A program made the position numbers and the translations under genes. Below, piece by piece: positions 580 to 45,100 of a DNA stretch of 64,000 nt. The DNA is from Chlorokybus atmophyticus (lineage: Eukaryota; Plantae; Mesostigma and Chlorokybus algae): contig RHPI01002264.1 of NCBI GenBank assembly GCA_009103225.1, positions 294,170 through 358,169 of the forward strand, in the 5' to 3' direction. The notes under the pieces were generated by a model. That model was not told the origin of the DNA, ran no database searches, and saw only the letters and a program-made list of their open reading frames with translations. Every line of letters begins with the position of its first letter. The first letter of the stretch is position 1.

Positions 580-809
580 ATGGTGCGCTGGTTGGTGAAC
601 AAATGGCTATGGCTGTGGCTGCCGCTGCTGTGCCCCCCTGCAGCGATGGCACAAGTACCAGGTCCGTCACTGTCACACTGTGTCCGCCTCATGTCGTCTC
701 TCTCTTTCTCGCTCTCTGTCTCTTTCACACACAGCTATGTCCTACTATGCATGAACTAGTGTGCATATGGACTGCAATTTGGCACAACCAAAGACTCCTT
801 CCCTTGATC

Positions 810-858
<49 letters not shown>

Positions 859-3660
859 ACACACGGGAGACCGCCATTCCAATCACTGTCCTGCCATTCG
901 CATATAACGCCAGCACAGTTTACGCACACAGCAACTATATCTTCAGCGGCGAGTGTGTAGATCTTACACTGACAGGACCGCATGCGCCTGATCTCGTGTT
1001 CCGGTAAGTGCTGGTGTCTGCATGCATAGATCAGTCTCGTGTTGTCTCTTCACAGCTGAGGCTCAGGGCTGTACGTTGGCGCCTGCTACCAGGTACTCTC
1101 CTGCGGCAGATGCTCTACTGGACGTTGGCACATGCCCTACCAATTTTGACACGGTGCTGTTTGTTTGCAATCCGCCGGATGGCTTGGGCAACTTCAACTG
1201 CTCTCTCGGATGTAACGATGATGGCTGTGGTTACCATGGGTCCCAATTGACTGCGCTTCAGTTCCGTGGCGGCAATACCTATTACATCGTGAGTTTGAAC
1301 TTGAACTTGAATGCTGCTGCACGTATGTTGTTTTTCTCTTGGTCATCTGCGACAACGGTAGCTATGACCACTCTGTGCGGCAACCAGTATGTGACAGGTT
1401 ACGATAGTGCGAGCGGTAATTTCCAGCTTACCATGAACTACACTACTTCGAGCTTGACGTCTTCACCACCGCCACCACCATCGCCGCAGTCCCCTTTGCC
1501 TGCTCCTGCTCCGGATCCCCCACCTGCCTTTGCTCCCGCACCTGCCTTTACACCCGCACCTGTCTATAGTTACACTTCCGCACCCGCAAGTGCCACCTCT
1601 CCATCACCGTCAGCTGCAGCTTCATCCATCACCTCTCCAACCCCAAGCACAGCCACGGCCTCAGGCAGCAGAGGCTCTGCTTCTACATCAAGCGGAAATG
1701 GTATGACATGGCTTTCTGATGTGGATAACCGTTACCACCCACTCACTGCTGTGACGGTTTGCGGCTCGTGCAGGGGCAGGGGTGGGCGGAGCGGTGGCTG
1801 GTTCCCTGCTAGCGGTGGCTTTGGTTGTCGCTGGAGGGTATGTGTATTGGCGCAAGAGACGCGGGCAGCCCATCATACCTTTCACCACCTATGCACGTGC
1901 CTCAACAATTGGAAAGCTCGATGACACACATGCGTTGTCCCCTGCAGATCTTCCTCCTCCTGCTGCAGCTGCCTTCTTCCGCTCCCCCAACGGTCACGAG
2001 CACACCATAGGTGAGTGCCTGATGTCAAAAGCAACGTAGACTGATGCAAGCACGCAACCGCCCGCGCACAGTACCAACCCTCCCTACGCCTTTCTTTCTT
2101 CTAGCAGGGTCGCTGCCAGACGATGGTGTTGTCGTTGTACGTGTCGGTGGTCAAGACCGCCAGCTGTCACGCACTGCTTTAGCTAGAGGCAATGCTGGCC
2201 AGCTCAGGCAGTTCTCCTTTCAGGAGATACTGGCAGCAACGCAGTGGTTCAGCGCGCAAAGGCACATCGGCAGCGGAGCCTTCGGAAACGTATACAGGTG
2301 CGCACTACATGCACGCATGCGCGCATGCAGTCATCAGAAAGTGCATCAACTGTTGTTGTGGGTCTTGACTTGACGAGGGTTTTGTCTGTGTACGCAGTGG
2401 TCGCTTGCATGATGGCACGTGGGTGGCCATCAAGCGCCTTTCTTCTTCTGCGGGTGTGGTGATGAGCAGGGAGCTGGATACGGAGATGGCTGTGCTGGCC
2501 AAGGTGCAGCATCCCAACCTCGTGCGCATGCTCGGGTTCTGCCAGGAGGACGAGCAGTGTGTGCTTGTGCTGGAGCTCCTAGACAAAGGACCGCTCGATC
2601 AACACATCTACAAACGAGGTGAGTGAGGGAGTGAACATTTATGATACAGGAGTTGGGGCAAAGTTGACTCTGGTATGGTCTGCTCAGGCAACACATTTAC
2701 GTGGGCGCTTCGTCTGCGAGCGTTGTTTGGGGTCGCCAAGGCCTTGGCGTATCTGCACCACGAGCTGCCGGAGCCACTCGTCCACAGGGACATCAAGCCG
2801 GCAAACATTCTGCTGGACGCCAACTACCAAGCCAAGGCATGCACATGTGACTGTACTACTACTAGACTGTCGACACACCATCAGCAGGAATACACACAAC
2901 ACTAATGAGCACAACAACAGGTGACAGACTTCGGTCTGGTGCGCGAGGTGCCAAACAATGCGACACATGCGCACTCTGCCGTGGCCGGCACATATGGGTA
3001 TATAGTTCCAGTATTGTGCTTGACATGCAACGTAAACACGCACGTACGTGTAAATTGGAATTACAAGTCTTCACCAAAAATCACTTAGTTGTATCCTGCC
3101 CGTACAGCTACCTTGCGCCAGAGGTTGTGGAGTTTGGCATTTACCGCCCCAGCTCGGACGTGTACTCCTTTGGGGTGGTGATGCTGGAGGTACTGACCGC
3201 TCGCAAGCCGCTGGACATGACCAGGCCCGCCACGGAGCAGCGCCTCGTGAGACTGGTAGGGAGACAGCAAAAAGTAAAGTACACGGCACGCTCCTCATTC
3301 ACAAAAGATGTTCCATACCACATGCAAGCAAGTTTCAAAGCTGCACACATGCAGCGTGCACGCTGCCAGTTTCATTTCTTGTACTGTATTTACTTGGCTG
3401 CATGAGGACATCATGCATGTACGCGCCCACATATATACACATATACGCAGGCTGTGTCGAAGGTGGCAGAGGGTCCTGGTCCGTTCTCCACCCTGTTGGA
3501 CCCCACGCTGCAGCTGCGCGAGCACGGCGACGTGGCTCAGGCGTTTGGCGTGGCGAGGCTGGCCGCCCGCTGCGTGGCCAAGGAGGCGGAGACGCGGCCC
3601 GATGCGAGGGAGGTGGTGGCCAGGCTGGAGGAGGTGGGGTGGTGGGGTGGGAGTTTGTGA
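580..3660 (+). CDS. RLK1: receptor-like kinase (RLK/Pelle) with signal peptide, PPC-like beta-sandwich ectodomain, Pro/Ser stalk, TM helix and RD kinase; ~656 aa
   Basis: Hand-spliced exons 580-661, 856-1003, 1093-1288, 1388-1700, 1774-2010, 2108-2297, 2398-2618, 2688-2836, 2921-2997, 3108-3255, 3451-3660 stay in phase (1971 nt). Kinase motifs [44 protein letters not shown]; [23 protein letters not shown] followed by RKRR. Confidence 0.9.
812..854. repeat. (AC)n microsatellite in RLK1 intron 1, abutting the acceptor AG
   Basis: Direct reading of the sequence. Confidence 0.98.
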
Positions 3661-4609
3661 TGTTGCTTAGATGTGGCTGAGAGATGTTTGTTACACCACA
3701 TAGCTATACGGTTGAATATCTCACCTGTCATTTAAGTAATGAAGCTGTGGGTCATCATTGGAAAACTTTTTGATGCCTGGCCATTGTGAGCAGGCATATA
3801 ATAACAGGGCAACACGCATTGGGAACACGATACAACAGCATGTCACCATCTGAGCAGACAACAAACTGATGTATCTGCAAAGTTAGCGACATTGCCATAG
3901 TGATGTAGCAACGGATTGGAGAAATAGATAGTTACTACGTTTGCATGTTGGGATGGGCAACACTATTTGCGTGCAAAGTGGCAGGTCCAAGTTGGATAAA
4001 CTGTTGCATCACATGTACCTATGTGCATATTGACAGGTATGCATGCTTTACGCGTAATTGTCGGGCTGCGCAGGGTTGAATGTGAAGCTGTCTCGAGTTG
4101 TTCAGGTGTGATGGTGTGGGTGTGTGAGAATGGCTGCACATGTGTTCATGGTGGCGTGTGACACAAGTGAAGGCAAAAGAATACCCCCCTGCTGAGGATA
4201 CTGGGTATAGGCTCATGGGATAGATCCCACGTGCGTGTATGGCCAAGGGCAAACATATTAATAACCATAGGCGTGACAGCTGTCGGGCCTGGCAGGCTCG
4301 TGTGCCTTTCCGGATCGATCCCAACTGTACGGCCATGATGAAGACTGGTGACAGTCTTAAGGATGCCTAGGAGTGTAGCTGCACAGTGCGGAAGGCGAAG
4401 AATACCCCCTTGGCTGCAGCTGCTTGTATGCATAACACATACGGTGATACCAACCTGTGATGCCATTGAGTGTACTGTAGGCTCTGCGTGTGGAATGCCC
4501 TGCTAACAATGTAGAAGAGAGCAAGTCAACAAGCCACCCCCCTGTGAACTTGGGAAGTCTGCTCTTGTGAGCAGTTCTTAACGAAAATGGGGAGGCCCGT
4601 TGATGCGGC

Positions 4610-29311: not shown

Positions 29312-29366
<55 letters not shown>

Positions 29367-30379
29367 NGTGGCACACGAGAGGCTGCCATCAACATCACAT
29401 CCGTGCCATACTCGTACTGTGGCAGCACAGTTGGGGCAGGCAGCAACTATACTTTCACCGCCGCATGCAATGCGACTGATGGGCCTGATGTTGTGTTCCG
29501 GTGAGCGCTGGCACAGGCTTGCGTCTGCGTATGCATGGTTTAGTCTCCTGTTGTCTCTTCATTGCACACGCTCAGGGCTAGTCAATGCGTCTCCTACCAG
29601 GTACTCTTCGGAGGAAGATGCTCTGGTGGACATTGGCACATGCACCTGCACCACGTTCGACACGGTGCTGTTTGTTTGCGACCAGCCGGATGGCTTGGGC
29701 AACTTTGACTGCCCTCTCGGGTGTGACGATGATGGCTGTGACACCATCTACTCTGGGTCTCGTGCGTCCCGGCTGACTGAGCTGCAATGCCGTGGCGGCA
29801 ACACCTACTATAGCGTGAGTCTGGACCTGAAGGGTGAATGCGCTGCTGCACGTGAGTAGTAGTACTGACCACTCTGTGGGGCTACCAGTACGTAAGAGAT
29901 TACGATGCTGAAGAGAGCGGCGACTTCCAGCTCACCATGAACTACACGGACTTGACCTACCATGCAGGTGGACATGCATGTTGCTGTACTGCACACGCAG
30001 CACGACACGTTTCCACGCACACAACGCTAAGCTGTGCATGTTGTGGCAGCAGGTGCACCTCCCCCACCCCCCATCATCTCAAACCCGCCTCCCGCTTCCG
30101 TCTCCTCTCCTCTACCACCATCACCACCACTGTTGTTAGCACCGCCATCACCACCATCGGCACAACCCCCTTTGCCCGCCGTCACGTCCCCTCCCGCGCC
30201 TGCTTCAAGCGTAAATGGTATGTTGTGGCGCTTCGTGTTGAGTCGCGCTACCACCACCCACAGTCACTGTTGTTATGATGGCTTATGCAGGGGCGCTGGT
30301 GGGTGCAGCGGTGGTTGGTTCCTTGCTGGTGGTTTGCTTGTGGCAGGCACTACAACACTCTTCATGTATTAAGACCTGA
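29180..30379 (+). pseudogene. Kinase-less paralog of RLK1 (PPC-like ectodomain, stalk, short TM); probable pseudogene or receptor-like protein
   Basis: Exons read GTREAAINITSVPYSY..PDVVFR / [36 protein letters not shown] / YVRDYD..GDFQLTMNY / Pro stalk / GALVGAAVVGSLLVVCLW..T*. ACG at the position of the RLK1 ATG; the exon 2 acceptor is hidden by an N at 29367. Confidence 0.75.
29315..29366. repeat. (TC)n microsatellite in intron 1 of the kinase-less paralog
   Basis: Direct reading; ends at a single N. Confidence 0.97.
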
Positions 30380-31873
30380 AGATTGGATGATGCGAGCCAC
30401 CAAAACTTAGTTACAAAAGTCAAATGCTTCAACATCTTTAAATGTCCAATGGAAAGTGCATTTTTTCCCTTTTCATTCAAAGACGCTATGCAACAATGGG
30501 TATGCGCTGGAGCAGGTTACAACTAGCTCCATGTAGCTAACACTACTTTGTAAGCGGCTGCTAGTAGCTACTTACCATAAGTTCTCCTTGCTTCAGTGTA
30601 AGTTATTTGAGACTCGTGGCAAGTGATAGCATAGACCATTGTGTATGTGTTCACATCAGCATGCACTTGTGCACAGATGCTGCATGCTGGTTGTAAGACC
30701 GCATCATGAGTCCAAGTGATTTGTACTTCTGCACGGTATTTCAAAGATATTCAGGTAAGCCTAGGTTATTAGCTTATCGCATGCAGTAGTGCAAACCGAG
30801 CGCAAGACCATGACATTTGCAGTCATGCAACGTGAGCTTTTGTATGGGCCACAAACGGTAACAACCACATTATACTATAATGTGGTTATAATAGTAATGC
30901 CGTTTATTGAGTGCGGACTTTTATCGCTATATATCTTTATCTATGCTATGCTTAGCGATCCGCTGCATAGAACGGCGCAATCCTGTCAACAACACACGTC
31001 CCTAGGACAATTGTCCTGCTACAGCCTACCATGCAAAATCATACATCTAACGCTGTGCCTATATGAGCGTCCCCCCGCACCTCACCGGCGTGCTCCTTTC
31101 TTCATACACCCTCGCGAACAAGCCAAGCAGCCTGCACCGTTGCATGACGCATCGTGTTCAACCGTGTGGCGATAGGCATGCATAATTACTAAACGGTTCC
31201 ATCAGGGCGTTGAACATGCAAATGACAGAACTTGCTGCATACATATAACCGCTTACCAATGTATAAACCGGCAACATATCCGTATCTTGAGCCACAGTGA
31301 CTGTAGCAGCATCCAGCTAAGCTACAGTGAAACACACACGATTGGTTTAGGTGTTGGGTTGCCGCATGCCGCGCAATGCATAGACTTCTGTCGTGAACTC
31401 CGCTTTATTAACAGCACCGCTGCTGCATGTGTCCACCACCTTCACCACCGCTTGCCGCTGCAACATCAATGACATAGACATATGTTGGCGCTGCTGCAGC
31501 AAGTTGTTTCCTCGCGCGATATCATCATGCTCACCTCAGCCGAAAAAACGGCTTGGTAGACAGACCTAAATGAGCCCATGCCAACTTGTCCGTGGCAGCG
31601 GCCAGGACCTGCGGCGAAAGCGCCAGGCCGCTGCCGCCAGCCTATAACATTACAAACATCATTATCATCATCATTATCATCATCATCATCAACATAATAA
31701 TGTGCAATGCCATATTACATGTCAGTTTAAGTTGGCCAGGCATCGACCATTGATTCAATGGCGACGCACAACTCACTATATGAATTTCATGAGTTGACCC
31801 ATACATTCATATGGTGTAACATGTCTCAGGAGCCGCTAAATAATGAACCGGCAATCAACCTTACTTCAATTGT

Positions 31874-32075
31874 GTAGTCAGCAAACTTACCTTGTGTTGG
31901 GGGAGGTTGATAGAAACAGCGCTGCGTTATTTGCAGCTGCCGTTGTGCGGTCCGGATGGTCAAGTGGCCTATTGGTGGTGTGAAAGGTGCAGCTGGCTCG
32001 AGATAAGGTCACAAAACACGGAGCGGCTGTCGGTAACCTGAAGAGCCGCGTCCCATGCTTGTCCTGTTACGTCAC
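31874..32075 (-). promoter_or_regulatory. Conserved upstream module, copy 4 (antisense to RLK3, now separated from it by ~10 kb of inserted TEs)
   Basis: 31874-32673 is the inverted homolog of the RLK2 upstream region (~23270-24044). Confidence 0.6.
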
Positions 32076-35000
32076 AGCATCGTCGCACGCTTGGCGATTC
32101 AATGTCCCCTTCAAAGCCAATATAACGATGTCATGGAGATCAGCCGCCTCCATGCATGGATTGCTTCCTTGGTGGTGAAGGGTCAAAGCAGCCTCCTACG
32201 CGGTGCCGCTGCGGTCCTCTTTGTTTTGACATCAAGAAGCGTTCACGCCGGTGGTTGCGGCATCGGACGGCGGCGGGGTGCGGGGCAGCGGCCCAAGTGA
32301 CGTAGTAAGCCAAGCGTGACCAAGTGATTACGTCACTTGAGATATGTGTTACTAATACTAATAGTTTACTCAAAGGTATCAGAGTGCCAAGTGACGCTAG
32401 CAGACTGCTCGAGCGACCGCGGCGTCAGCGCCGACGATGGCCAGCGGCAGGATGAGGGGTGTGGCCGGCATGTAGCTGCAGCAGCAGTCTGTGGATGATA
32501 ATACTTGCGCTCTGTCATCTTTGCAAGCGCTTGCTTGTTTGACGTTCGTCTATACGGTGTAGATCGGTTGTCTTTGCGGGCTGCTGCATGCATTGGGGCC
32601 TGGGCCCAAACACACTAGCAGCAGTCGTGACCCGCTGGTTACTATCTAGTGGCTTACGATCACCATGCATTGCAATGTGATGGGCACAAACAGCATGGGT
32701 CCAAGAATCATCAACATACAACTACTAGACATATGCATAGTAATCTGCTACGCCAAGTCCAATAAAGTCATGCCCGCCACATCCCCTAACTGTATCGCGA
32801 GCTGGCCCGGCGACTCGTGATGGGGCTGCCCGTACAGCACCCGCCGCCACAGCCAAGATAGCGGATGCCTGAGAGCGCTGCAGAACGACGAAAACACGGT
32901 GGTTGTAACGATGCTCGTGCTCACATACACAGCACACAAGTCATACAACACATGTGTGCAGCTGAGCACAATCTTCACACCGGAACCTTGCCTTCACTCG
33001 CGCACGCACGCACGCGTCGAGCGCGCACACGCACACGAACACTATTACTTCTCACGCCAAGCAAGAACGCAGCAGTGTGCCTTGGACCACAACTCCCTCA
33101 AGCATGCACCAGCATACTCACAGCAGAGAGCAGAAAACAAAGTTGGTTGCATTACACAGGGTTTTTCTATTTATACAAGCACTTAGGAAGAAATAGCCTA
33201 ATTAACAGGCATTTCATTATTCACTACCAAATCTAAAGGCAGGTCCAAGTGCAGGCTCCCCGCCACGCGCGTTGGGCCTTCGGCGGCTGTGTGACTGTGC
33301 AGTCCGCGTCACCTGGCACTGCACAGCGCGTGTCCAGTCAGCGGCTGTGTCACAACCGCGTGACAGATGGGTCACGTCGCCGAATTAGCTGCTGTCGAGC
33401 AGGTCGCAGGCGAGTCGCGCGCGGCAGCAGGGCAGGCGCCACATGGGCTTAATAAAGCTCATAAAAGCCCTCATCAAGCCAGCAAAAAATGCAAAATAAG
33501 TACTTTATGTACAATAAAATACAAAAAATGCCCCAGGCTGTTACACCCCTTCCCCCCCGGGGGAGCTCCGTCCTCGAAGCTGACGACTGCCTCCTCTGGC
33601 CTTGTAGTCTTGCAAGACCTGTTTGGCATTGGTAAAGCTCTCCTCGGGCTCGTTTGTCGCCTCGTGCATTGGATAGCCACGCCACTTCACCAAATACTTG
33701 CGCACGCCTCGGATCAGATTGTCCGTGACAATTGCTTCCACTTCCCACTCAGCCTCACCTTCACGAACCACATCTAGAGGCGGACGAGCTGGTGGCTCCC
33801 CTCGATAACCTTTAAGAAGCGAGACATGAAAAACAGGGTGCACATGCATGGTATTGGGCAGCTCCAGCTTGTAGGCCACCTTCGAGATGACCTTGATCAC
33901 TTTAAAGGGCCCAAACCATCGCTCACTCAGCTTGCGCACCCCCGTGACCAGCTGCACATGCTTGGTTGAAAGCATTACAAGGTCACCCTCCTCGAACACA
34001 ACATCCTTGCGACGCGCATCGGCGTATTGCTTTTGCCGGTTTTGCGCCACAAGCAGAGCCTCTCGAGCTGCCTTGGTAATGTCGGCACACCTTTCAAGAA
34101 AGCCGTCCACGGCCTCCACATCTGAACTTTGCATGCTAGGCACCCACGCCGTCAATGGCGTCAATGGATGTTGCCCATAGTTCATAAGGAAAGGTGTCAC
34201 GCCCGTGCTTGCACTCTTGTGGTTGTTAATGGTGAACTCAATCAGCTCCAGCATGTCTCCCCAATTGTCTTGGCGGCTGTTCACATAGCACCGTAGCATG
34301 TCTTCGATGACGCGGTTGGCGCGCTCCGTTTGGCCGTCCGTTTCAGGGTGGTACGCGGCGCTGAACTTCAAGCTCGTGCCTAGAGTTGCGTAAAGAGCTC
34401 TCCAAAAGTTGCCAGTAAACCGCGGGTCTCTATCACTGATAATGCTTTTTGGAAGGCCATGAGAGCGCACCACATGCTTGATGAACAACTTGGCAGCCTC
34501 GGGAGCTGTGCAAGTCTCCGTACATGGCGCCAATCGCACCATTTTGCTAGTCTTGTCCACAAACACCAAGATAGCATCATGCCCTTCACGTGTCCGTGGC
34601 AGCCCCGTGATGAAGTCAAGAGTAACTTGCTCCCACTTCGTCAAAGGTATCGGCAATGGTTGGAGCAGCCCACTGGCGCGTTGATTGCTCGCCTTCACCC
34701 TTTGACAAGTGTCGCACAATGCCACATAGTCCTTAACGTCACGATGCATCTCCGACCAGAAAAATTTCTGTTTCAACAAGGCTAGTGTCCGTTCCAGCCC
34801 TTGATGACCAGCCATTGGCACATCATGCGCTTCCTTCATCAATGCCACGCGCATGTGCGCAATGTTGGGTATGTACATGCGATCGCCATGCCATAGCAGC
34901 CCGTCCTTCAATGCCCAAAGGCCGCTATGTTCAGTCCCATTCTCCAACGCCTCAATGGTCTTCTCCCCCACCGCGTCCTCATGCAATAACGCACGGATCT

Positions 35001-37227
35001 GGTCAAGCCATTTGGGCTGCACTTGCACCACCATTTCAAGCGCGTTGAGTTGACGGCTTAATGCGTCCGGACCTTATTTGAACAGCCCGGCTTGTACTTC
35101 ACTTCAAAGTCGAAGAGTTGGAAGAATTCGAGCCAATGAGCTTGCCGCCGTGAGAGGTGAGGCTGCGTTTGAAGGTACCTTAATGGCGAGTGGTCCGTCT
35201 CAAGTGTGAACCGCTTGCCTTCAAGGAAACAACGCCATTGCCGTAGCGCTAGCACCTGCGCCAGCAATTCCTTCTCATGAACGGGGTAGTTGAGCTCAGC
35301 CCCGCTCATCTTCTTGCTGAAATAGGCCACCGGTTGCAAGCCGTTGCCGTGATCCTGCTGCAAAACAGCCCCAATAGCCTTGTCGGACGCATCACACGCC
35401 ACCACAAAGGGCAATTGCATGTTGGGATGCAGCAGCACGGGAGCCGATGTCAGGGCCTCTTTCAAGTCGGAAAATGCCTTTGTTGCAGCCTCCGACCAGC
35501 TCCAAGCCACCCCCTTCCTCAACGATGCCGTCAATGGTGCCGCCAAGTGCGAAAAGCCCTTTACAAACTTACGATAGTAGCCGGCAAGCCCTAGGAACGA
35601 CATGACACCCTTCACGTCCTTCGGGGCAGCCCAATCGCGCACCGCGGCAAGCTTGCTTGGATCTGCCTTGATTCCTTGCTTGGATACAATGTGGCCAAGG
35701 TATTCTACCTCTTCAAGCAAGAAGCGGCACTTGTTGAGCTGAGCAAACAACTTGTGTGTACGTAAACGCTGCATCACCTCGTGTAGCAATGCCACGTGCT
35801 CTCTCTTGCTCTTTGTGTACACAAGGATGTCGTCGAGGTACACTAGCACGCCCTTGCCAATCAGATCAGCAAAGACCTCATTCATCAAGGTTTGAAAGGT
35901 TGCCGGAGCATTTGTCATGCCAAAGGACATCACCAACCACTCATAGTGGCCATAGCGAGTGTTGAAAGCCGTCTTCTCGACGTCTTCGGGCGCAACACGG
36001 ATCTAATGGTAGCCACCAGCTAGGTCCAAGCTTGAGAAGAACTCAGCACCCTCGAGCTGCTCCAACAACTCATCAATGCGTGGCAAAGGGAACACATTCT
36101 TCTTGGTGATGTTGTTGAGTGGCCGATAGTCGATGCACATGCGCAAGGCTCCGCTCTTCTTACGTACAAATAGGATAGGTGCACCGTAAGGAGACTTGCT
36201 GTGCCTGATGTACCCACGTTGTAGAAGGTCCTCGACTTGGCTCCTCGCCTCTTCGAGTTCAGCCGGAGACAACTTGTACACCGGTCGGTACGGCGGCTTG
36301 TGCACGCCCTCTATCAGTTCCACACGGTGATCAACACTTCGCGTGGGTGGCAGACCAGCTGGTAGCCCATCCACCATGACGTCTTTGAACTCTTCAAGCA
36401 ACCTCTGCACCTCGGGGTCCTTCGAACTCTCCGAACCAGTGCCGACCAGCTCCAAGTCCGACTTGGGAGGTGTCTCACGCACCATGCACAGCCATGCATC
36501 CTTCACATTGTTCCCGGACCAGATCTGCTCCATCTTGGTCTTAGAAACTTGTGACACCAGCTCTGGAACCCCTCCCCTTGAGCTAGAAGCATGTTGTGGT
36601 GCAGCTTGCTGACGCGCCGTCGTGTCGTGCGCGTCACGCGCATGCAGCACATTGCTAGCAGCCTCGACGCAGCTCATACGCTCTTGAACCACACACGCGC
36701 CTTGCATTGAAGCATTGAAGCACATCAAAACCTCACCACCAGCTTCCGGGGTAGTGAGCACCCGCTTCCTCCAATCAATGGCGGGGTTATGTGACCAAAG
36801 CCAAGGCAGCCCCAAAATGCCATCAAAGCCGTTGTTCAGCTCGATGCAGCAAAACCGTAGGCGATCCTTCATCATCCCCACGTGCATTTCAAGCTCTTTG
36901 CTTTGCTTGGAAGCTCCTCCTGCTGGCGCATAGCCGTCCGCTAGAGCCACCGAGCCGGCATTTGCCCATGACAACCACTTGTGCCGACGCGCAACCTCAC
37001 GACTCATGAAGTTGCTGTTCGCGCCGCAATCCACCAGCATTTTGCACTCCATCCATGGCCCATTGCCCTCACGGATCAGAGCCATGACTCCCAACAGCTG
37101 CCTCGCCTTGTCGGGCACTCGAACCATACCGCTTTGCGTTGCCGTTGCGCACATGCCGCCAACCGTCAACAACGCTTCCACGCCAGCCGCTGGACATTCA
37201 ACATCATAGTGAGGCTGCATCACCACC

Positions 37228-37268
37228 TCAGCAGGAGCCTCTCCAGCTACTGAGGTGAGCCGTTTCCC
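37228..37268 (-). other. Predicted -1 ribosomal frameshift signal (G GGA AAC, 7-nt spacer, hairpin) linking gag to pol
   Basis: Slippery heptamer in gag frame at 37262-37268; the -1 frame is open into the protease ORF; stem CTCAGTAG...CTGCTGAG. Confidence 0.75.
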
Positions 37269-38293
37269 GGCTGCAACATCTCCTCCTCCACCATGTTCAC
37301 GCGTCCACCGCTGCGAGCGTTGCGGGCATGTGCAGCAGACTTTGCCTTATAGATAGGGCAGTTGGAGCGCACGTGATCAGCAGAAGAGCACTCCCAGCAC
37401 TTCCGAACAGCCTTGGCAGCCTCCCGACCCTTTGGGGCCTTCATAGCAACATGGAGCGCACCCAATTCCATTGGAGTTGGTCCCAAGCCAGCCCCCTGAG
37501 CTGCTGCAGCTCCCGAACCAGCCCCAACAGATGCGTATGAGCGATACGAACCTCCACGGAAGTGATTGTAATGTCCACGATCAGTGTTTTTGGCAGCCCC
37601 CTTGAAGTACAACACGTCCGTGCGCTCAGCAATGCGAATGGCCTCCGCGAGAGTCTTGGCGTCACGAAGCTCAACTTCCTTGCGACAAAGAGTCTTCAAC
37701 CCGCGCGTGTAGCGGTCCAGCTGCTCCTCCTCAGTCATGTTCGGTACAGAGAGCACAAGACGCTGAAACGCAGAGGTATAGGCCATCACGGACTGCGTTT
37801 GCACAAGCGTAGAGAGCTGGTCGCGTGCCGTCTTCACACTCTCCACCGGTACGAACTGTTTCTTCACCTCAGCAGCCAGCTCAGCCACGGTAGTGAAAGG
37901 AACCTCAAGACCAGCTTCCACACGAGCACAACGATGACGCCACCACACAAGTGCAGCTCCCTCAAAGAAAGTAGCAGCCACATCGACACGGAGATGTATA
38001 GGTACCTCGGTGAGCTTTAACCATGTCGAAACGGCAAACACCCACTCCTCCACACAGTCACCGTCCCTCTGACCCTTGAATGGCTTTGGTTTTGGTAGCT
38101 TCACATGACGAGAGGCTGATGGGGCAACCACAGGAGCTGTAACGGGCGTGGACGCGCGCGCTTGCGCCATGGCTTGTTGAAATTGTGCCGCTTGAGCTTG
38201 GGCAGATGCTTGGACACGTTGCAGCTCCTCATGAGCAGCTACCAGCACTTGCTGAAGCTCCACAACACGTGCATCATCCATGGTAGCGTCCAT
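37247..38293 (-). CDS. Gag of Gypsy A (348 aa, zinc knuckle)
   Basis: Open ORF with [14 protein letters not shown]. Confidence 0.9.
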
Positions 38294-41200
38294 AAACAGA
38301 GAAATACCTCACACACCAAAGAGATAGTTAATATCCCCTTAAAACAAGAAACCCAACCCCTCCAAGGGCTCCGATACCACTGTAACGATGCTCGTGCTCA
38401 CATACACAGCACACAAGTCATACAACACATGTGTGCAGCTGAGCACAATCTTCACACCGGAACCTCGCCTTCACTCGCGCACGCACGCACGCGTCGAGCG
38501 CGCACACGCACACGAACACTACTACTTCTCACGCCAAGCAAGAACGCAGCAGTGTGCCTTGGACCACAACTCCCTCAAGCATGCACCAGCATACTCACAG
38601 CAGAGAGCAGAAAACAAAGTTGGTTGCATTACACAGGGTTTTTCTATTTATACAAGCACTTAGGAAGAAATAGCCTAATTAACAGGCATTTCATTATTCA
38701 CTACCAAATCCAAAGGCAGGTCCAAGTGCAGGCTCCCCACCACGCGCGTTGGGCCTTCGGCGGCTGTGTGACTGTGCAGTCCGCGTCACCTGGCACTGCA
38801 CAGCGCGTGTCCAGTCAGCGGCTGTGTCACAACCGCGTGGCAGGTGGGTCACGTCGCCGAATTAGCTGCTGTCGAGCAGGTCGCAGGCGAGTCGCGCGCG
38901 GCAGCAGGGCAGGCGCCACATGGGCTTAATAAAGCTCATAAAAGCCCTCATCAAGCCAGCAAAAAATGCAAAATAAGTACTTTATGTACAATAAAATACA
39001 AAAATGCCCCAGGCTGTTACAGTGGTGGAACTAGGCGACCAACCGCTGAACGAAGCGACTCTCCAATTCACGTGCATCAGCCATTCGCTGAGCGCACAAG
39101 GACAGCAGGTCGACAGCCAGTGCTCCCAGCCAGCCATGAGTCTCGATGGCTAAACGGATGAATGTGTCGGAATTGGCGTGATCGCGGTACTTGGCCTTCT
39201 TCTCGCGCTCCGCTGCCATTACCCCCGCACTCGGACGTGGCCGGCAGGCCGTAACTGTCACGTCCAAGTAAATGCGACTGACACGACCTGACTCGCAAGC
39301 CACACTGTCCATACGCCTCCCCTGTTGCTCATTTCCCAACAGTGGTAGTACACCTGTCACCTCACATCTCACGGCGTAGCCCGCCTCCCGTAATAATCGC
39401 AGCGAAGGTGTCGCGCAGAGCGTCATGAGTAGCTATGCGGTGCCCGCCCCGCATGCACATAAACAAGTGAGCATCCCTCACACTCAGCAGCCGATGACCA
39501 CATGCACAGAAACGAATGTGCGCCAGCAGAGGGTGTGGTAAGGCCAAGATGTGACGCACTGCAGTGCGATACTGAGCAGCGGACATGCGCAAGTCGTCTC
39601 GCACAAGTACCGCCAACAACCAAGCACCTGCACCAATGCCCGCTGTCAACTGCAACCGGTGCACGTTACTGTGGCCGCTGGCTAGGATGAAGGACGCTCG
39701 TGTACTAGCATCAATGCATGAAGCCAGCTTCTGCTGAAGACGTCTACTCTGTGAGGTCGCCAACGCCGCAAATGATGTCTGCTGCAATGAATCTGATGGT
39801 AATAAGGATGCAGCGAGGCAAAGGTCGTGATGGATAGGCAAGTCTCCCACAGCAACATGGTCAATAGCAGGCCTCAAACGCTCGTCACAACGCGCAGCCG
39901 CCAAGCGCGGACGCATCACACTAGCCACCAACCCCCAACCTCCTATGAACGCCGCCGGTGCAACAGCAGCTGCACGCCGGAGTCCCACACCGCCCAAGGT
40001 CACAGGTAACAATAATTGGAGGAGCGCACTTTCGGACATATCGAGCGGGGCTGGCGCGTGCATCAGCATCAAGAAAGCGTTGCAAATAGTGGTATTAAAC
40101 TCGAACGACTGCGCAATGAAGGCCGGAGTGGGAGCCACCGTGCGTATGAGGTACGAGGGGCGTGCGGCGACACAGTGTGTAAAAATCAATGAGGCCACCT
40201 GTGTGTCACGCATGCGGAGCAGCGCAGAAACGATGGCTGTCGCGTTCGACACGACAGCTGTCGTTTCTTTGTTTGCTGACAAAACTCCACAACTGAAGAT
40301 GGTGACCCCACAAGTATACCTAATGGATGAAAGCCATCAGACTCCACGCACACTGTTGATGGGAACACGCTCGGAATCGCCGACTCACTGAAAAGCAGTG
40401 ACTTGTCCCACCGCACCATTACACCAACAGCAGCAAGCGCAGCGCACACAGCCTCCGCCGCCTCAGCCACGTCAGATGGAGGCCCCCATGAAGAAGCTGT
40501 CATCCGCATCGGCACCGCCACATTGGGGAAGCGAGCGATGGTCCGAGTCACAACATCGGTGTCATCCGCATACAACAACCCTGCTAATGAATCCCCCTGC
40601 CGAGTGCCAGTGCACGAATCAATGCGCTCAACACCGGTCCCCCTGGAGTAAAATAATGCCGTCGGGGAACTGTAAAACTGCCTCAGGAATGGGATCAGAC
40701 GCGCAAAGGGACTCGTGCGCAGCAGCACGAACATAGCCGTCCGGTCAACCGTGTAGAATGCATTGGCGATGTCAAGTTGAAAGCCCACATGATGTGGATG
40801 CGCCTGCAGATAGGTGCGAACGCTTTGGGCCACAATCTCAGAGCCACCCTTGGTTGCCACGCCAAACTGCCATGGCTTCAAGTGGGTGCAAGCCACATCA
40901 TGAATAGCAGCAGACAATGAGCGCCCCACCATCTCCTCTGCAAAGTGTCACCGATGGCAATGGGACGGACACCACCGGCAGACTTCTGTAATGCCAGAAG
41001 TCTGCACGCTGCCATTGAAGAGGCTATGACAGACGGCATGCGCCCTGCAGCAATCAACGAACGAACACACGTGGTGCAATGCAGCCAGTGAAGCACTGTG
41101 ACCATCCAGGAACAACTGTCTGAGGTGATCGTAAGACATGCCAGAGGGTCCCGCCGCTGCCTTGCGTGGTGCGGTTGCCAAAGCCGTGCGAAACCCTGAT

Positions 41201-42669
41201 AAGTCCAACTCCACGGGCTCATCGGGCAGGCAAGAAGGCAACCAGTCAGGCAACACGGTGAAAGCCGAAGGATGAAGACGTCGAAGTTCAGCAATGGTGT
41301 GGTCAGTGTCTGGTGCTGGTGGAGAAGGAGTCAGTGCTGCACATGCTCGACGCAACTCCCCTGCTCTGCCCAACATCTCCGCGCACAAGATGGCAGCATC
41401 AGCAGCTGCCTGTTGTTGCCGTTGGCGTGGATGTGATGCAGCATATGTTGCTGCTGCGTGCCTGTCCTTCAACAATGACTCCTCTCCCATCATGAACCTC
41501 TTTGCTCGTTGCAACGCGCGAATGGCTTGACCATGTGACCATGCTCCAGCTCGTGCCAACGGGGACAATAATAGTCGAGGCCACATCAGCAGCAACGTCC
41601 AGCCGGTGGCGTCGTTGGCATCACAACCAATGCGGTGTGTACAAACGGATAGTGCGCGCGCAAGGTCCATGCGTGCAGCATAGGGGATATGACTGATGAA
41701 GCCGACCACCATCTGGCTTCAACTCATGCAGCAAGTCAACGGTGGTCAACCAGTCCCATGCTGCAATCGGGATGTGCTGGTTGACAGGTGCTGACTGAGG
41801 CATCTGCTGTGTGCTCACAAGATGACGACGCACATCGTTACGTGAGCAAGCGCGATGGTGTGCGTGAATGCCACGAGAAGTGAAACACTCCCCACACATG
41901 TCACAACGCTGATCACGGGCTGCTGTGGCACGCTGAGCAATGGCCCTGAACATGGGGCTGAACAACAGGAGCATGGACTGGTGTTGATGGACCAGCATGT
42001 GGATGTGCTACATGTTGCTCACTTGCATTGTTGCCATTAACTGCTGGCGTGAGTTGCTGCACTGCAGCCTCCGTTGATGACGGTGACATCATCAACAAGC
42101 TGGACTGCATCACCTTGACGCCAAGGACGCCGTATGAAGGACTGCAGCCGCTCTGAAGCTGCTGCACTAAAGGACGTGTGACTGGTGTTGGCACTGGAAC
42201 TGCTGACTTCGTCGTCAAAATCCGCCGCTGCGTCCTGGAAGATGTCGCTGCTTACGCCACCAGCAGCAAAGGACGCGTCGCTCGCTGTGACAGACGCGTG
42301 GTGCTGGCCGCCGCCATCTTCAGCATGTTCACCCCCAAGACCTCCCCTTGCGCTGCGAGCAGCCTGGCCCGGAGCTTGAGGAGCACGTGACCTCAATCTG
42401 GTTGCGAGTTGCAAACCAGGTCGAGGTCTGCCGCCGCTGCTGCCGTTGGTAGCACTGCCGCCTCCACCTCCACGTGGACTAGCGGCATGCACAGGTGCTC
42501 TAGGCCTCACGGCACCGGAGACTCTCCTAACTACCGCACTGTAGCTACAGTGCTCGTCACCCTCCAGGCTACTATAGTAGCCTGGAGGGTGACGAGCACG
42601 CCGCCCATACCCTCCGGCAGAGTCCACAGGTGCACTCATATTGCGTGGTGTCTTTGCAGGAGTGGACGT

Positions 42670-45100
42670 ATGGCTGGCGTTCCGTGCAAGTGAGCAGCAT
42701 GCCGCGGTGTGTGCGATGCTGTTACTAGCCCTCCTCACGTTCAGCACCATTCCCAGGTGTGAGCAGTCACTGCCACCAACATGTACTGCATTTGACATTG
42801 TCAACCCAAATGGCACACACCAAGTAGATTCGAAGCTGTGTGGTGGTGTGCTTCACTGATGACAAGCTGACGATCAGTCTTGCACTGACCTTGCATCTGT
42901 CATCGTAACGATGTGTCGCGATGCAGCGCGCAAGCGCAAGACTGCCCAAGTGGCTGCACCTTGTCGACAACCAGACGCAAATGCTACCCGTTCAATTTGA
43001 CTACATCAACGTTTGAATCTGCAGACACGAACAGCGCTCTCTACCTCCCTCTAGAGATCTGTACTGCCCTCCCTTCCACTTTTGTACCCTCCCCAACCTC
43101 GCGCGGGCATACTTGTATTCAGCTCACAGCAACACACTGCCACACGCTCAGGCATTTGCAATCCGAGGCGCCACAGTGGCCTTCCCAACCAGCGCGGAGG
43201 AAGATGCTCAGCTGGTGGCCTTGTCCTATGGTCAGGTACAATTGTGTTCTAGGTCCAAAAGTCGCATAGTTGCAGCTGCCACATGCCTGCAATTCGGGAA
43301 TCTGGGGTTGGTTGCATGCAAGGCATTACTTACGCTCTGATCATGAGGTCGCATATGTATTCACAACGACCTACTGTTAAACTTTAAAATTTGGGTGCAG
43401 GCAATTTGGATTGGAGTCTCTCAGAATGGGACCTGTTCTGCTGGCGGGTACGCTTTGCAGCTTCGCGTCACAGATGATCTTGACATGATGTAGAGCCACA
43501 CTCACAGTCTTGACCGTGAACAATGATGATAATGTGCATTTCTTGGGCCAAGCCACAAGCCAGAGCCCAAGGCCAGCAAGGGCGGGCTCCCAACCCCAAA
43601 CCAACCAGCGACCGACCAACACACGCATTCATCATCACCAACAGCGAATAACATACGTTGTTAGGAATCGCAAGTGCAGCAATTGACGCTATTGTGTCTT
43701 GTCTTTCAGTCTCTGTGCCAACAGATGCGTCTGCACCAGCTGCCCAACATGCAGGTGAGAGGATGTACACACACGTCCTGACATACTTTGCGCCATATGC
43801 ATGCACTTGGATACACTCCATCTCACACGATGGTAATGACGGACACGATAACCCTTAAAAAGCTTCTTGAAGTCTCTGCTGCGGAGCGGAAGCACATCGA
43901 TGCAATGTTGATGGCGTCTTGCTTTCATGAGATGCACAGGCATGCATGTGTGTGGGCCAACATGGATGAATCCTATGCGTTGAGCGAGGTGCAGCATGCA
44001 TATGTCTGCGCAAGCCCAGCCATCATCATGATGTTTTGTGCGTGCCTCCCGCACCACATCACAATCTCCGCACAGACCGTGAGAGACAAGGCGACGACGT
44101 GCCGCGAGTGCGAGTGCGCGTGCGACTTCCGACAGTACCCCAACGGCGGTGTACTCACGTACACCAACTAGACTGGCGATTGCTCTGGGGTGTTTTTCCC
44201 CGACAACACGGGCTGTGATTCCCACGAGTGGGTGGTGCTTATTACGTGGGCTGCTGGTGGCTGGAACGACATCGCTAACAATGGCAATTCTGACAGATTG
44301 TTGGTGAATGTTGGTGAATGTGAGTGCCCTCCATGCCCTCCTTTCACACTGTCACTTTACCCGTCATGTACCACCAGGGTTACGCGAGTCATATGCGCAT
44401 GCATACGGGAACATTGTTTGCGTAGTGTGAATGTGTGCATTAACACCTGCCGACATTGATTACAGGACACTGCTTGCGCTTGTACGGTCTGTGCACGCTC
44501 ACCATTTGTGTGCTTTGCCGTGTACCAGTGCAGCTCCCCTCAACCCCACCACCACCGGTTGCCCCTGCACCCGTACCAGTGCCCCCACCCCTCCCAACCC
44601 CCCAAGCACCTGATGCCTCCAATGCTCCTACCCCTGCACAACCTGCAAGTTCAAAGGGGGGAGGGGGCAGTGGCGCAACCATCGCCGTGGCCGTAGTTGT
44701 GCCACTCCTTGTGGTTGTGTGCATCGTCGCAGCTGCCGCACTGCTGTACTGCTATTGGTGGAAGCCGTGTAACCGCACACGCATGCGCACGCCTCCTCCT
44801 CCTTCTGCAGCTGACTCCTTCCGCTCCCCAAAGTATGCACGAGGGCAGGAGACCGGCGCAATTAACATTGTTGTGACCAACGCGAGCGCTCCATACGGTT
44901 ATGCGCACCCAAAAGGTGACTCACTCGGAGTGCATGCCGAGCAGCAACATATACTGGTGCCAGAACTCATGCATAGTACCAACCCCCCTCCCTAAGTCTT
45001 TCTCTCTGGCAGCAGGGTCGCTGCCAGATGATGCCGTTATTGTTGTTTGCGTCGGCTGTCAAGACCGGCAGCTGTCGCGCATTGCTTCAGCTGCAGGCAA
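42670..45100 (+). pseudogene. RLK3: pseudogenised paralog of the C-type lectin RLK2, truncated before the kinase domain
   Basis: MAGVPCK* (2-nt deletion relative to RLK2 exon 1), YTN* (TGG to TAG at ~44169); exon and intron homology to RLK2 ends at ~45100 in the juxtamembrane exon. Confidence 0.88.

What the first reader, a model, noticed from the sequence alone, without database searches (positions are those of the whole stretch)
580..45100. Subtelomeric receptor array with swapped ectodomains on a near-identical kinase
Seen: RLK1 (+) and RLK2 (-) share kinase exons of identical size and similar introns, and differ at only 7 of 73 residues in one block (ORFs 2405-2626 vs 20279-20500), yet carry unrelated ectodomains (PPC-like vs C-type lectin) and different TM helices. 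Homology starts inside the juxtamembrane exon at AAA(F/S)FRSP, not at an intron. Each ectodomain type also has a broken or kinase-less sibling within 45 kb. Established: ectodomain fusion drove RLK/Pelle diversification, and subtelomeres host fast-evolving recognition genes in many eukaryotes. Inference: an actively recombining, birth-and-death receptor repertoire in an alga, possibly for microbe or cell-wall sensing.
Basis: partly seen in the sequence, partly recalled or inferred. Interest (0 to 1): 0.82.

Follow-up and report, generated by a model that had tools for sequence, protein, structure and literature searches.

The report
Algal receptor kinase with swapped ectodomain
Near a chromosome end of the early-branching green alga Chlorokybus, a receptor kinase gene was rebuilt by joining a different outer sensing part to a copy of a lectin-type receptor's kinase half; this is a fairly recent, breakpoint-mapped example of how plant-type receptors gain new inputs, though whether the hybrid gene is expressed could not be tested.

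Summary
RLK1 (+, 580-3660) and RLK2 (-, 23245-19240) share a 1.7-kb kinase cassette. The cited ORFs match at 66/73 residues. Five of six kinase exons have identical sizes, and both genes share the same GC-AG intron. Over 265 codons, 241 residues are identical (dS 0.33, omega 0.13). Introns still align at 61-76% (one at 91%). Both flanks fall to random similarity, at AAA(F/S)FRSP inside the juxtamembrane exon and 8 nt past the stop codon. "Near-identical" overstates this: 91% protein, about 80% DNA.

The genome is Chlorokybus atmophyticus; RLK2 is public model Chrsp112S08647. RLK1 has no annotated counterpart, yet forms an intact 11-exon, 656-aa ORF. The nearest other kinases, 48-49% identical, carry RLK2's lectin-like ectodomain. 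RLK1 is therefore the derived chimera.

The C-type lectin call is supported by a profile search against solved structures (E to 3e-11). "PPC-like" is not verified. Both siblings are broken. A (TTAGGG)n telomere ends the window. Intron identities order the splits: PPC pair about 70% and kinase cassette 68-72%, both older than RLK2/RLK3 at 78%.

"Actively recombining" and any sensing role are unsupported. No RNA data were available, so neither spliced transcript was confirmed. Other first-reader notes of this scan flagged the same cassette.

The parts
580..3660 (+). RLK1: intact 11-exon receptor kinase gene (656 aa). Exons: 580-661 (signal peptide), 856-1003, 1093-1288, 1388-1700 (unassigned beta-rich 'PPC-like' ectodomain plus Pro-rich linker), 1774-2010 (TM + juxtamembrane), then kinase exons 2108-2297, 2398-2618, 2688-2836, 2921-2997, 3108-3255, 3451-3660.
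   Evidence: Splice sites and phases were worked out from the sequence; exon lengths sum to 1971 nt, divisible by 3, with no internal stop. Kinase exons hit Pkinase / PK_Tyr_Ser-Thr. No annotated counterpart was found.
1945..3668 (+). Kinase cassette of RLK1 shared with RLK2: end of the juxtamembrane exon, six kinase exons and six introns. The 5' edge lies in a CCT/GCN-rich tract inside an exon; the 3' edge is 8 nt past the stop codon.
   Evidence: Exons 87-91% identical; introns 74, 91, 76, 64, 61 and 68%; 3' flank 42%. dS 0.33, dN 0.044, omega 0.13 over 265 codons.
19240..23245 (-). RLK2: intact 13-exon C-type-lectin-like receptor kinase (712 aa in my chain). It is the public model Chrsp112S08647 (P0001, 739 aa), which appears mis-spliced. 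Exons: 23245-23157, 22990-22888, 22800-22717, 22532-22486, 22218-22174, 21834-21505, 21353-20920, 20808-20607, 20507-20287, 20211-20063, 19983-19907, 19807-19660, 19449-19240.
   Evidence: P0001 is 98% identical to the window frame. The exon chain has GT-AG introns, one GC-AG, and no stops; it sums to 2139 nt. The ectodomain runs parallel to P0153. A profile of this ectodomain subfamily hits only C-type lectin domains in the PDB.
28758..30376 (+). psiPPC: broken sibling of RLK1's 5' half (upstream region, signal exon, ectodomain exons, linker, first half of the TM). ACG replaces the ATG, the Pro-rich linker is in another frame than the domain exons, and a stop follows a shortened TM. Nothing kinase-like lies downstream.
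   Evidence: Alignment with RLK1 209-1823: introns and 5' flank 66-74%, exons 68-81%; dS 0.54, dN 0.25, omega 0.46.
31809..32673 (+). Displaced upstream (promoter) block of RLK3, homologous to the region upstream of RLK2 (24109-23272).
   Evidence: 80.4% identity.
32904..42640 (-). About 10 kb of nested retroelements inserted ~30 nt upstream of RLK3's ATG: a Ty3/Gypsy chromovirus at 32904-39021 (LTRs 32904-33545 and 38381-39021, 98.9% identical) and a second RT-bearing element at about 39.4-42.8 kb.
   Evidence: Self-BLAST. Pfam finds gag, protease, RT, RNase H, integrase and chromodomain.
42642..45113 (+). RLK3: pseudogene sibling of RLK2 (lectin-like ectodomain, TM, juxtamembrane exon with the RLK2-type 18-codon segment, intron, first ~32 codons of kinase exon 1). 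Exon 1 has a frameshift/stop (MAGVPCK*). Kinase homology ends at about 45113, followed by unrelated sequence and the gap at 45207-45390.
   Evidence: Exons 81.0%, introns 77.7% identical to RLK2; dS 0.26, dN 0.21, omega 0.80.
27897..28387 (-). Diverged kinase remnant (VVHRDLKPNNVLLDENLAPRV...) beside a solo LTR (27163-27833).
   Evidence: tblastn; Pkinase E 8e-5; LTR copies 97% identical.
63918..64000 (+). Telomeric repeat (AGGGTT)x13.8 at the window's right end.
   Evidence: Tandem Repeats Finder, 100% matches.

Best explanation
RLK1 is a derived chimeric receptor kinase gene made at the DNA level. A genomic copy of the 3' half of a C-type-lectin-like receptor kinase (the RLK2/RLK3 lineage), running from the end of the juxtamembrane exon through all six kinase exons and their introns to the stop codon, became joined in frame, inside an exon, to the 5' half of an unrelated gene. 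That 5' half encodes a signal peptide, a beta-rich ectodomain of unassigned family, a Pro-rich linker and its own TM helix. Both products stayed under purifying selection, so two different extracellular inputs now feed nearly the same RD-type RLK/Pelle kinase output. Shown: the cassette, its boundaries, intact ORFs, selection on the kinase, the direction of the swap, and the decay of both siblings. Inferred: the mechanism. A PPC-type gene still lies directly upstream of, and in the same orientation as, a lectin-type receptor kinase (psiPPC then RLK3). The RLK1/psiPPC split and the RLK1/RLK2 cassette split have the same intron-level age. The simplest route is therefore one segmental duplication of such a tandem pair, plus an internal deletion that fused the PPC gene's TM exon to the lectin receptor's juxtamembrane exon within a CCT/GCN-rich tract. 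RLK2 and RLK3 separated later, and RLK3 and psiPPC decayed. I put this specific route at about 35%. Function (carbohydrate-type ligand for the lectin domain, unknown ligand for RLK1) is inference only.
For: The homology tract includes introns, so it is not a retrocopy. Its edges are sharp, with random similarity outside. Intron p-distances (0.24-0.39) match synonymous pS 0.27, as expected for one copying event; omega is 0.13. Only one representative protein in 1.8 billion scores below E 1e-30 with the kinase (P0001 = RLK2). The next Chlorokybus kinases, P0003 and P0153, are 48-49% identical and carry the same lectin-like ectodomain and a similar TM (A.VVVP motif) as RLK2. RLK2's ectodomain and kinase are about equally distant from P0153 (41% and 40-47%), so RLK2 holds the native pairing. 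RLK1's TM is homologous to psiPPC's, not to RLK2's. The AAAFFRSP segment is absent from P0153 and P0003, so it reflects recent shared ancestry rather than a conserved family motif. RLK1 and RLK2 are both open across 11 and 13 exons and share a GC-AG intron. Ages from intron identity: RLK1-psiPPC about 70%, cassette 68-72%, RLK2-RLK3 77.7%. RLK2 and RLK3 share an 18-codon juxtamembrane segment that RLK1 lacks.
Against: There is no transcript evidence for either gene; the only run found is low-coverage DNA with no joints. RLK1 is not in the public annotation. In the only stretch where all three cassettes overlap (about 180 nt), RLK1-RLK2 (80.6%) is closer than RLK2-RLK3 (75.1%), against the order inferred from longer stretches. 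The 3' edge falling exactly at the stop codon is not predicted by a random duplication. No trace of the proposed deleted interval can exist, so the tandem-plus-deletion route cannot be tested from this window.
Confidence: 0.7

Rival explanations
1. Two old, independently assembled receptor kinases (PPC-type and lectin-type) whose kinase halves were later homogenised by ectopic gene conversion. On this reading the ectodomain difference is ancient and only the kinase similarity is recent.
For: Both edges of the tract coincide with the limits of the region that two kinase genes would share (juxtamembrane to stop codon), as a conversion tract bounded by homology would. One intron is 91% identical, against 61-76% for the others, which could mark a later, smaller conversion. 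The genes lie 15 kb apart in a repeat-rich subtelomere.
Against: Conversion needs a fairly similar acceptor sequence, but the nearest other kinases in the proteome are only 48-49% identical. The tract starts in a juxtamembrane segment that is not conserved in those relatives. The exons flanking the conserved intron are no more similar than the rest. Even if true, the PPC ectodomain would still have had to be joined to a kinase of this clade after its split from the lectin-bearing outgroups, so conversion only moves the date of the swap.
Confidence: 0.15
2. The swap went the other way: the PPC + kinase pairing is native, and the lectin-type genes RLK2/RLK3 acquired RLK1's kinase cassette.
For: With only three cassette copies and no outgroup DNA, the cassette tree cannot be rooted from the window alone.
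Against: P0003 and P0153 pair the same lectin-like ectodomain with the sister kinase clade. RLK2's ectodomain and kinase are about equally diverged from them, which is a congruent history. RLK2's TM also resembles P0153's.
Confidence: 0.05
3. Assembly artefact: RLK1's ectodomain and kinase halves come from different loci and were joined by mis-assembly in a repeat-rich subtelomere.
For: The scaffold has gaps (29367; 45207-45390), and RLK3's homology breaks 95 nt before one of them. No reads were laid on RLK1, because the single read-laying run went to RLK2.
Against: The junction lies inside one continuous exon, with a TM helix followed by a basic stop-transfer stretch. The frame is kept through 11 exons. 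RLK1's kinase is a distinct, diverged copy (dS 0.33) under purifying selection, not a collapsed duplicate. There are no Ns or repeats at 1800-2000. Independent DNA contigs match the RLK2 locus with 0-2 mismatches.
Confidence: 0.05

Closest known systems
Plant RLK/Pelle receptor-like kinases, C-Lec (C-type lectin) subfamily
   Same: Signal peptide, C-type-lectin-like ectodomain, single TM, juxtamembrane segment and an RD-type RLK/Pelle kinase ([30 protein letters not shown]). The best non-Chlorokybus hits are land-plant RLKs. [quoted passage not shown]
   Different: The lectin domain is divergent: below Pfam's cut-off (15.7-21 bits vs 22.6), with a Cys-rich insert between the WIGV strand and the CDF..DGS region. 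RLK2 and RLK3 read FPD where P0153 and P0003 have the QPD sugar-site motif. The public model of RLK2 looks mis-spliced.
Domain shuffling as the source of RLK ectodomain diversity (established view for the RLK/Pelle family; my own knowledge of Shiu and Bleecker 2001/2003 and Lehti-Shiu and Shiu 2012, not read here)
   Same: One kinase lineage paired with unrelated extracellular domains. Engineered ectodomain/kinase swaps work experimentally (PMC10588794).
   Different: Published cases are mostly ancient and inferred from trees. Here the event is young enough that introns still align, both breakpoints can be placed to within ~20 nt, the junction is inside an exon rather than at an intron, and relics of both parental types lie within 45 kb.
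Bacterial pre-peptidase C-terminal (PPC, PF04151) and galactose-binding-like beta-sandwich domains
   Same: Embedding neighbours of RLK1's ectodomain exons are bacterial PPC / GBD_T9SS_assoc clusters (scores 0.80-0.89). The single-sequence fold is all-beta. The ...DTVLFV...NDDGC...GGNTYYI...GYD..G.FQLTMNY pattern resembles PPC strands (by eye).
   Different: No Pfam, NCBIfam or PDB sequence match at E up to 1-10. Atlas scores are below the tool's 0.9 bar. The fold model has pLDDT 48. Membership is not established.
Subtelomeric birth-and-death gene families
   Same: Intact and decayed paralogs, inverted and direct segmental duplications, and young LTR retrotransposons within 64 kb of a telomere.
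   Different: Only two intact genes. Divergences of dS 0.26-0.54 show no recent exchange. No evidence of a large repertoire or of elevated rates relative to the rest of the genome.

Membership tests
RLK/Pelle (IRAK-like) protein kinase | Protein kinase domain with intact catalytic motifs | tested here: met
   Kinase exons of both genes hit PF07714/PF00069. P0001 scores 137.6 bits. GxGxxG, VAIK, HRD, DFG and APE can be read in the exon translations.
RLK/Pelle (IRAK-like) protein kinase | Closest relatives outside the species are plant receptor-like kinases | tested here: met
   FERONIA-, EMS1-, PSKR-, PERK- and LRR-RLK-type proteins at 30-37% identity, E to 1e-90. No tree was built.
RLK/Pelle (IRAK-like) protein kinase | Receptor configuration: signal peptide, ectodomain, one TM helix, cytoplasmic kinase | tested here: met
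   By inspection of exon translations only. RLK1: [18 protein letters not shown]..., [23 protein letters not shown] followed by RKRRG. RLK2...[12 protein letters not shown]..., [31 protein letters not shown] followed by KPRNRTR. No TM or signal-peptide predictor was available.
C-type lectin-like domain (PF00059) | Significant profile match to the family | tested here: inconclusive
   Pfam Lectin_C is below its cut-off: 15.7-16.5 bits on P0001 (N-terminal half) and 21.0 bits on P0003 (C-terminal half), against 22.6. However, a profile of P0153, P0001, P0003 and the window exon hits only C-type lectin domains in the PDB, E 3e-11 to 1e-4, covering both halves.
C-type lectin-like domain (PF00059) | Hallmark motifs in order (C..W...C(Y/F), WIG(L/V), W.DGS...Y.NW, (E/Q)P(N/D), WND, (F/V)CE) | tested here: met
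   CPSDW..KCYWF; TVWIGV; [17 protein letters not shown]; FPDN; GGWNDID; SVCE in RLK2's exon chain. The Q/E of the sugar-site triplet is F in RLK2 and RLK3.
C-type lectin-like domain (PF00059) | CTLD fold | tested here: inconclusive
   The AlphaFold2 model of P0153:186-385 with a 4-sequence alignment has pLDDT 44, too low to compare.
PPC / pre-peptidase C-terminal domain (PF04151) | Profile match to PF04151 | tested here: not met
   No Pfam family at E up to 1 on the ectodomain exons or the ORF 1055-1921. None in NCBIfam. None in the PDB by sequence or by 2-sequence profile.
PPC / pre-peptidase C-terminal domain (PF04151) | Beta-sandwich fold resembling PPC | tested here: inconclusive
The single-sequence model of window:1094-1450 is all-beta but has pLDDT 48. 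Atlas embedding neighbours are PPC/GBD clusters at 0.80-0.89, below the tool's reliability bar.
Chimeric gene formed by DNA-level segmental duplication and fusion | Shared tract includes introns and has sharp boundaries with non-homologous flanks | tested here: met
Chimeric gene formed by DNA-level segmental duplication and fusion | Parental gene types identifiable, and polarity supported by outgroups | tested here: met
   Lectin-type outgroups P0003 and P0153; PPC-type sibling psiPPC. Only annotated proteins and this window could be searched.
Chimeric gene formed by DNA-level segmental duplication and fusion | Chimeric transcript exists | not testable with these tools
   The only run holding the locus is low-coverage DNA: contigs lie on introns and show no joints.
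Ectopic gene conversion tract | Converted tract embedded in older, lower-level homology on both sides | tested here: not met
   The flanks are at random similarity: 42% 3' of the stop; about 30-40% identical columns 5' of 1945.
Subtelomeric location | Telomeric repeats at the end of the same contig | tested here: met
   (AGGGTT)x13.8 at 63918-64000, G-rich strand running 5'->3' toward the end. The array lies 19-63 kb from it.

The most novel reading that the evidence does not exclude
This chromosome end works as a workshop for new receptor architectures. The kinase cassette would behave as a reusable module, delimited by the juxtamembrane tract and the stop codon, that has been pasted more than once onto different ectodomain genes. 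A ~90-nt element upstream of all four receptor genes, and the unusually conserved first kinase intron, would then be functional parts of that system (co-regulation or recombination substrates). The PPC-like ectodomain would be a bacterial-type domain newly recruited to plant-type receptor signalling in the earliest-diverging streptophyte lineage.
Probability: 0.1. Interest if true: 0.75.

Novelty: new variant of a known kind. Interest (0 to 1): 0.5.

Why it matters
The diversity of plant receptor kinases is usually explained by ancient domain shuffling, inferred from trees. Here the same process can be seen at nucleotide resolution in a lineage that split off before land plants arose. The copied cassette still carries alignable introns, both breakpoints can be placed, the junction lies inside an exon, and decayed copies of both parental gene types lie nearby. 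This gives a concrete, testable case of how a new input is wired to an existing kinase output. It also adds an unannotated receptor kinase with an unclassified ectodomain to a genome reported to have only about 11 RLKs, and it flags a likely mis-spliced public gene model. It is not a new principle, and expression and function are untested.

Tried and rejected
1. Word-index protein search with the 399-aa stop-free frame of RLK2: nothing found. The annotated protein is 739 aa and so fell outside the length window. The exhaustive HMMER search solved this.
2. Word-index search with RLK1's ectodomain ORF: nothing found.
3. RNA evidence: the look-up of sequencing runs returned one run of unknown kind. 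Laid on RLK2, it proved to be low-coverage DNA, with 150-250-nt contigs on introns and exons and no joints. The single read-laying run was thereby spent, so RLK1 was never checked against reads.
4. Exon-wise Pfam on the ectodomains: no hits.
5. AlphaFold2 on the lectin-like ectodomain alignment and on RLK1's ectodomain stretch: pLDDT 44 and 48. I therefore ran no fold search.
6. PDB and NCBIfam searches for the PPC-like exons: nothing.
7. Rfam and a consensus fold on the conserved intron: nothing.
8. Retrocopy origin of the cassette: rejected, because the introns are retained.
9. "Kinase-less because of the assembly gap" for RLK3: rejected as the sole cause, because homology ends 95 nt before the gap.
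10. Joined (spliced) protein models of RLK1 and RLK2 were not sent to any search or folding tool. Exons were searched one by one by reference, and joined-frame checks were done only as length and phase arithmetic in scripts.
11. The telomeric repeat letters were not sent to any search tool.
Full report
WHAT IS THERE. The window is a eukaryotic, intron-containing chromosome end. It has about 53% G+C, ends in (AGGGTT)x13.8 at 63918-64000, and contains two gaps (one N at 29367; 184 N at 45207-45390). The exhaustive protein search returned P0001, 98% identical to the RLK2 frame. Its record is EukProt EP00898 Chlorokybus atmophyticus, JGI model Chrsp112S08647. The organism is therefore established from a database record, in agreement with earlier notes of this scan.

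OBSERVATION. The two cited ORFs are 66/73 identical. Self-BLAST shows 1990-3665(+) matching 20940-19235(-) at 79.5% over 1755 nt. A global alignment places the start of homology at GCTGCAGCTGCC(T/C)TC(T/C)TCCGCTCCCCCAA. This encodes AAA(F/S)FRSP and is preceded by a CCT-rich tract. It lies inside RLK1's TM/juxtamembrane exon (1774-2010), not at an intron. Homology ends 8 nt after the stop codon, and beyond that identity is 42%. Kinase exons are 190/202, 221/221, 149/149, 77/77, 148/148 and 210/210 nt. The third kinase intron has a GC donor in both genes. Exon identity is 87-91%. Intron identities are 74, 91, 76, 64, 61 and 68%. Over 265 codons, 241 residues are identical, with dS 0.33, dN 0.044 and omega 0.13.

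GENE MODELS. RLK1 resolves into 11 exons summing to 1971 nt (656 aa), with canonical splice sites and no internal stop. It encodes a signal peptide, a ~135-aa Cys-containing beta-rich domain, a Pro-rich linker, a TM helix followed by RKRRG, and the kinase. Searches with the kinase (406-1293 aa range) and with the ectodomain ORF found no annotated protein corresponding to it.

RLK2 resolves into 13 exons summing to 2139 nt (712 aa). The public model P0001 differs in three ways. It uses an AG 4 nt downstream at 22530/29, reading FGLESLGLG where my chain reads [12 protein letters not shown]. It reads the next exon in another frame. It also retains the fourth kinase intron. My chain runs parallel to paralog P0153 along the whole ectodomain. 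For example, RLK2 reads [38 protein letters not shown]...CDCACDF, and P0153 reads WIGVQRAGTCQATNNSCEVPVCQCSSCDACSASSDQTSRD...CDCACDF. Neither model could be checked against RNA. The only run that holds the locus is low-coverage DNA, whose contigs cover introns and show no joints.

DOMAINS. The kinase exons hit Pkinase and PK_Tyr_Ser-Thr. All catalytic motifs are present, and the nearest non-Chlorokybus hits are land-plant RLKs at 30-37% identity.

The RLK2-type ectodomain is below Pfam's Lectin_C cut-off (15.7-21 bits vs 22.6). However, a profile built only from P0153, P0001, P0003 and the window exon hits nothing but C-type lectin domains in the PDB: CD23, NKG2D, DEC-205, PLA2R, CD69, DC-SIGN, MBP-A and SP-A. 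E-values range from 3e-11 to 1e-4, and both halves of the domain are matched. The hallmark motifs are present in order. I accept "C-type lectin-like".

RLK1's ectodomain gave no Pfam, NCBIfam or PDB match. Embedding neighbours are bacterial PPC and galactose-binding-like clusters at 0.80-0.89, below the tool's reliability bar. A single-sequence fold is all-beta with pLDDT 48. "PPC-like" therefore remains a lead.

DIRECTION OF THE SWAP. In 1.8 billion representative proteins, only P0001 scores below E 1e-30 with the kinase. The next Chlorokybus kinases, P0003 (Chrsp55S00521) and P0153 (Chrsp290S04349), are 48-49% identical. Both carry the same lectin-like ectodomain and a similar TM as RLK2. 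RLK2's ectodomain (41% to P0153 in the large exon) and its kinase (40-47%) are about equally distant from P0153. That is a congruent history, so lectin + kinase is the native pairing. RLK1's kinase is 91% identical to RLK2's, but its ectodomain and TM are homologous only to psiPPC. The AAAFFRSP segment is absent from P0153 and P0003, so it reflects recent shared ancestry rather than a conserved family motif.

THE SIBLINGS. psiPPC (28758-30376) aligns with RLK1 from 209 to about 1823, introns included. It has ACG in place of the ATG. Its Pro-rich linker is in a different frame from the domain exons. It reaches a stop after a shortened TM, and nothing kinase-like follows. Against RLK1 it shows dS 0.54 and omega 0.46.

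RLK3 has its promoter block (31809-32673, 80.4% to RLK2's) separated from its ATG by about 10 kb of nested retroelements. One of these is a young Ty3/Gypsy chromovirus with LTRs 98.9% identical. Exon 1 reads MAGVPCK*. The gene keeps the RLK2-type juxtamembrane exon with an 18-codon segment that RLK1 lacks, the following intron, and about 32 codons of kinase exon 1. Homology then ends at about 45113, 95 nt before the gap. Against RLK2, exons are 81.0% and introns 77.7% identical, with dS 0.26 and omega 0.80, which is near-neutral. A further diverged kinase remnant lies at 27897-28387(-) beside a solo LTR.

TIMING AND MECHANISM. Introns are retained, so the cassette was copied as DNA. Intron p-distances (0.24-0.39) match synonymous pS (0.27), as expected if the whole tract dates from one event. 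Intron identities for the three pairs are:
- RLK1-psiPPC: about 70%
- RLK1-RLK2 cassette: 72% (68% without the odd intron)
- RLK2-RLK3: 77.7%

The cassette is significantly older than the RLK2/RLK3 split (446/620 vs 933/1201, z about 2.7, my calculation). It is the same age as the PPC split. Today psiPPC lies directly upstream of RLK3, in the same orientation. The most economical route, which is inferred and not shown, has two steps. A tandem pair (PPC gene followed by a lectin-type RLK) was duplicated. An internal deletion then fused the PPC gene's TM exon in frame to the lectin gene's juxtamembrane exon within a CCT/GCN-rich tract, giving RLK1. Later the lectin gene was duplicated in inverted orientation (RLK2/RLK3), and psiPPC and RLK3 decayed.

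There are caveats. In the only ~180 nt where all three cassettes overlap, the order of distances differs: 80.6% for RLK1-RLK2, 75.1% for RLK2-RLK3 and 70.1% for RLK1-RLK3. The 3' edge at the stop codon is unexplained. Both 3' flanks contain repeat fragments, so later rearrangement may have erased flank homology.

RIVALS. Gene conversion between two old receptor kinases would also give edges at the limits of kinase homology, and it might explain the 91% intron. But no sufficiently similar acceptor kinase is known, the flanks show no residual homology, and it would only move the date of the swap. The reverse direction is contradicted by the outgroups. Mis-assembly is unlikely given a continuous exon, a preserved frame and a diverged, selected kinase copy, but no reads were laid on RLK1.

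COMPARISON AND NOVELTY. C-Lec RLKs in Chlorokybus are already known (a review, PMC10868138, citing Gong and Han 2021). Domain shuffling is the accepted source of RLK diversity, and engineered swaps work (PMC10588794). What is new here is a comparatively young, breakpoint-resolved, exon-internal ectodomain replacement with parental relics beside it. There is also an unannotated RLK with an unclassified ectodomain in a genome reported to have only about 11 RLKs. "Actively recombining" and a role in microbe or cell-wall sensing are not supported by anything tested. Other first-reader notes of this scan flagged the same cassette and the PPC-like domain on this DNA; I did not rely on them.

LIMITS. 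The joined proteins were not submitted to any search or fold, which probably cost sensitivity for the ectodomain assignments. The telomeric repeat letters were not sent to any search tool.

Noticed in passing
window 63918-64000: The telomeric repeat is a 6-mer (AGGGTT, 13.8 perfect copies) rather than the 7-mer typical of most plants (the latter from my own knowledge).
   Followed up: no
window 2298-2397 (+) and 20508-20606 (-): The first kinase intron is 91% identical between RLK1 and RLK2, while the other five introns are 61-76%. The flanking exons are no more similar than elsewhere. No Rfam family and no covariation were found. It may be a small later conversion tract or a constrained element.
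   Followed up: partly
window 209-298, 28758-28870, 23853-23954, 31986-32073: A ~90-nt element with invariant cores (GACGT.ACA ... GCCAGCTG) lies 280-710 nt upstream of all four receptor genes. It has the gene's orientation in the PPC pair and is inverted in the lectin pair, although the upstream regions are otherwise unrelated between the two types. It could be a shared cis-element or a transposon fragment.
   Followed up: partly
window 19240-23245 (-): The public JGI/EukProt model Chrsp112S08647 (P0001) of RLK2 looks mis-spliced. It has the wrong frame for the WIGV and Cys-rich exons, a retained kinase intron and a different C-terminus. A fully canonical 13-exon chain gives 712 aa.
   Followed up: yes
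window 22717-22990 (-) vs 42925-43280 (+): The two exons encoding the N-terminal half of the lectin domain are less conserved between RLK2 and RLK3 (72% and 64%) than the neighbouring introns (72-83%). This could be decay of the pseudogene or diversifying selection on the ectodomain.
   Followed up: no
window 21700-21560 (-); P0153, P0003: At the sugar/Ca-site position of C-type lectins, the outgroup paralogs read QPD...W(N/H)D, the galactose-type motif by my own knowledge. RLK2 and RLK3 read FPD...WND.
   Followed up: no
window 27897-28387 (-): A diverged protein kinase remnant (VVHRDLKPNNVLLDENLAPRV; Pkinase E 8e-5) lies between a solo LTR (27163-27833) and psiPPC. It is not of the RLK1/RLK2 cassette type.
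   Followed up: partly
window 3689-3803 (+) and 31713-31821 (-): RLK1's immediate 3' flank is 66% identical, in inverted orientation, to the stretch just upstream of RLK3's promoter block (E 5e-7). This may be a trace of the rearrangement or a dispersed repeat.
   Followed up: no
window 32904-39021, 50828-56869, 27163-27833, 39362-42813: There are two related Ty3/Gypsy chromoviruses (internal parts 71% identical; LTR pairs 98-99% identical), a solo LTR of the second one, and another RT-bearing element. There is also a PHD-like fragment at 4650-5085 resembling part of the Gypsy element at 15422-15840 that earlier notes describe.
   Followed up: partly
P0003 (Chrsp55S00521) and P0153 (Chrsp290S04349): These two lectin-type receptor kinases on other scaffolds look roughly 90% identical to each other in the kinase (by eye, not computed). 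If so, recent duplication occurs elsewhere in this subfamily too. P0003 looks N-terminally truncated as a model.
   Followed up: no
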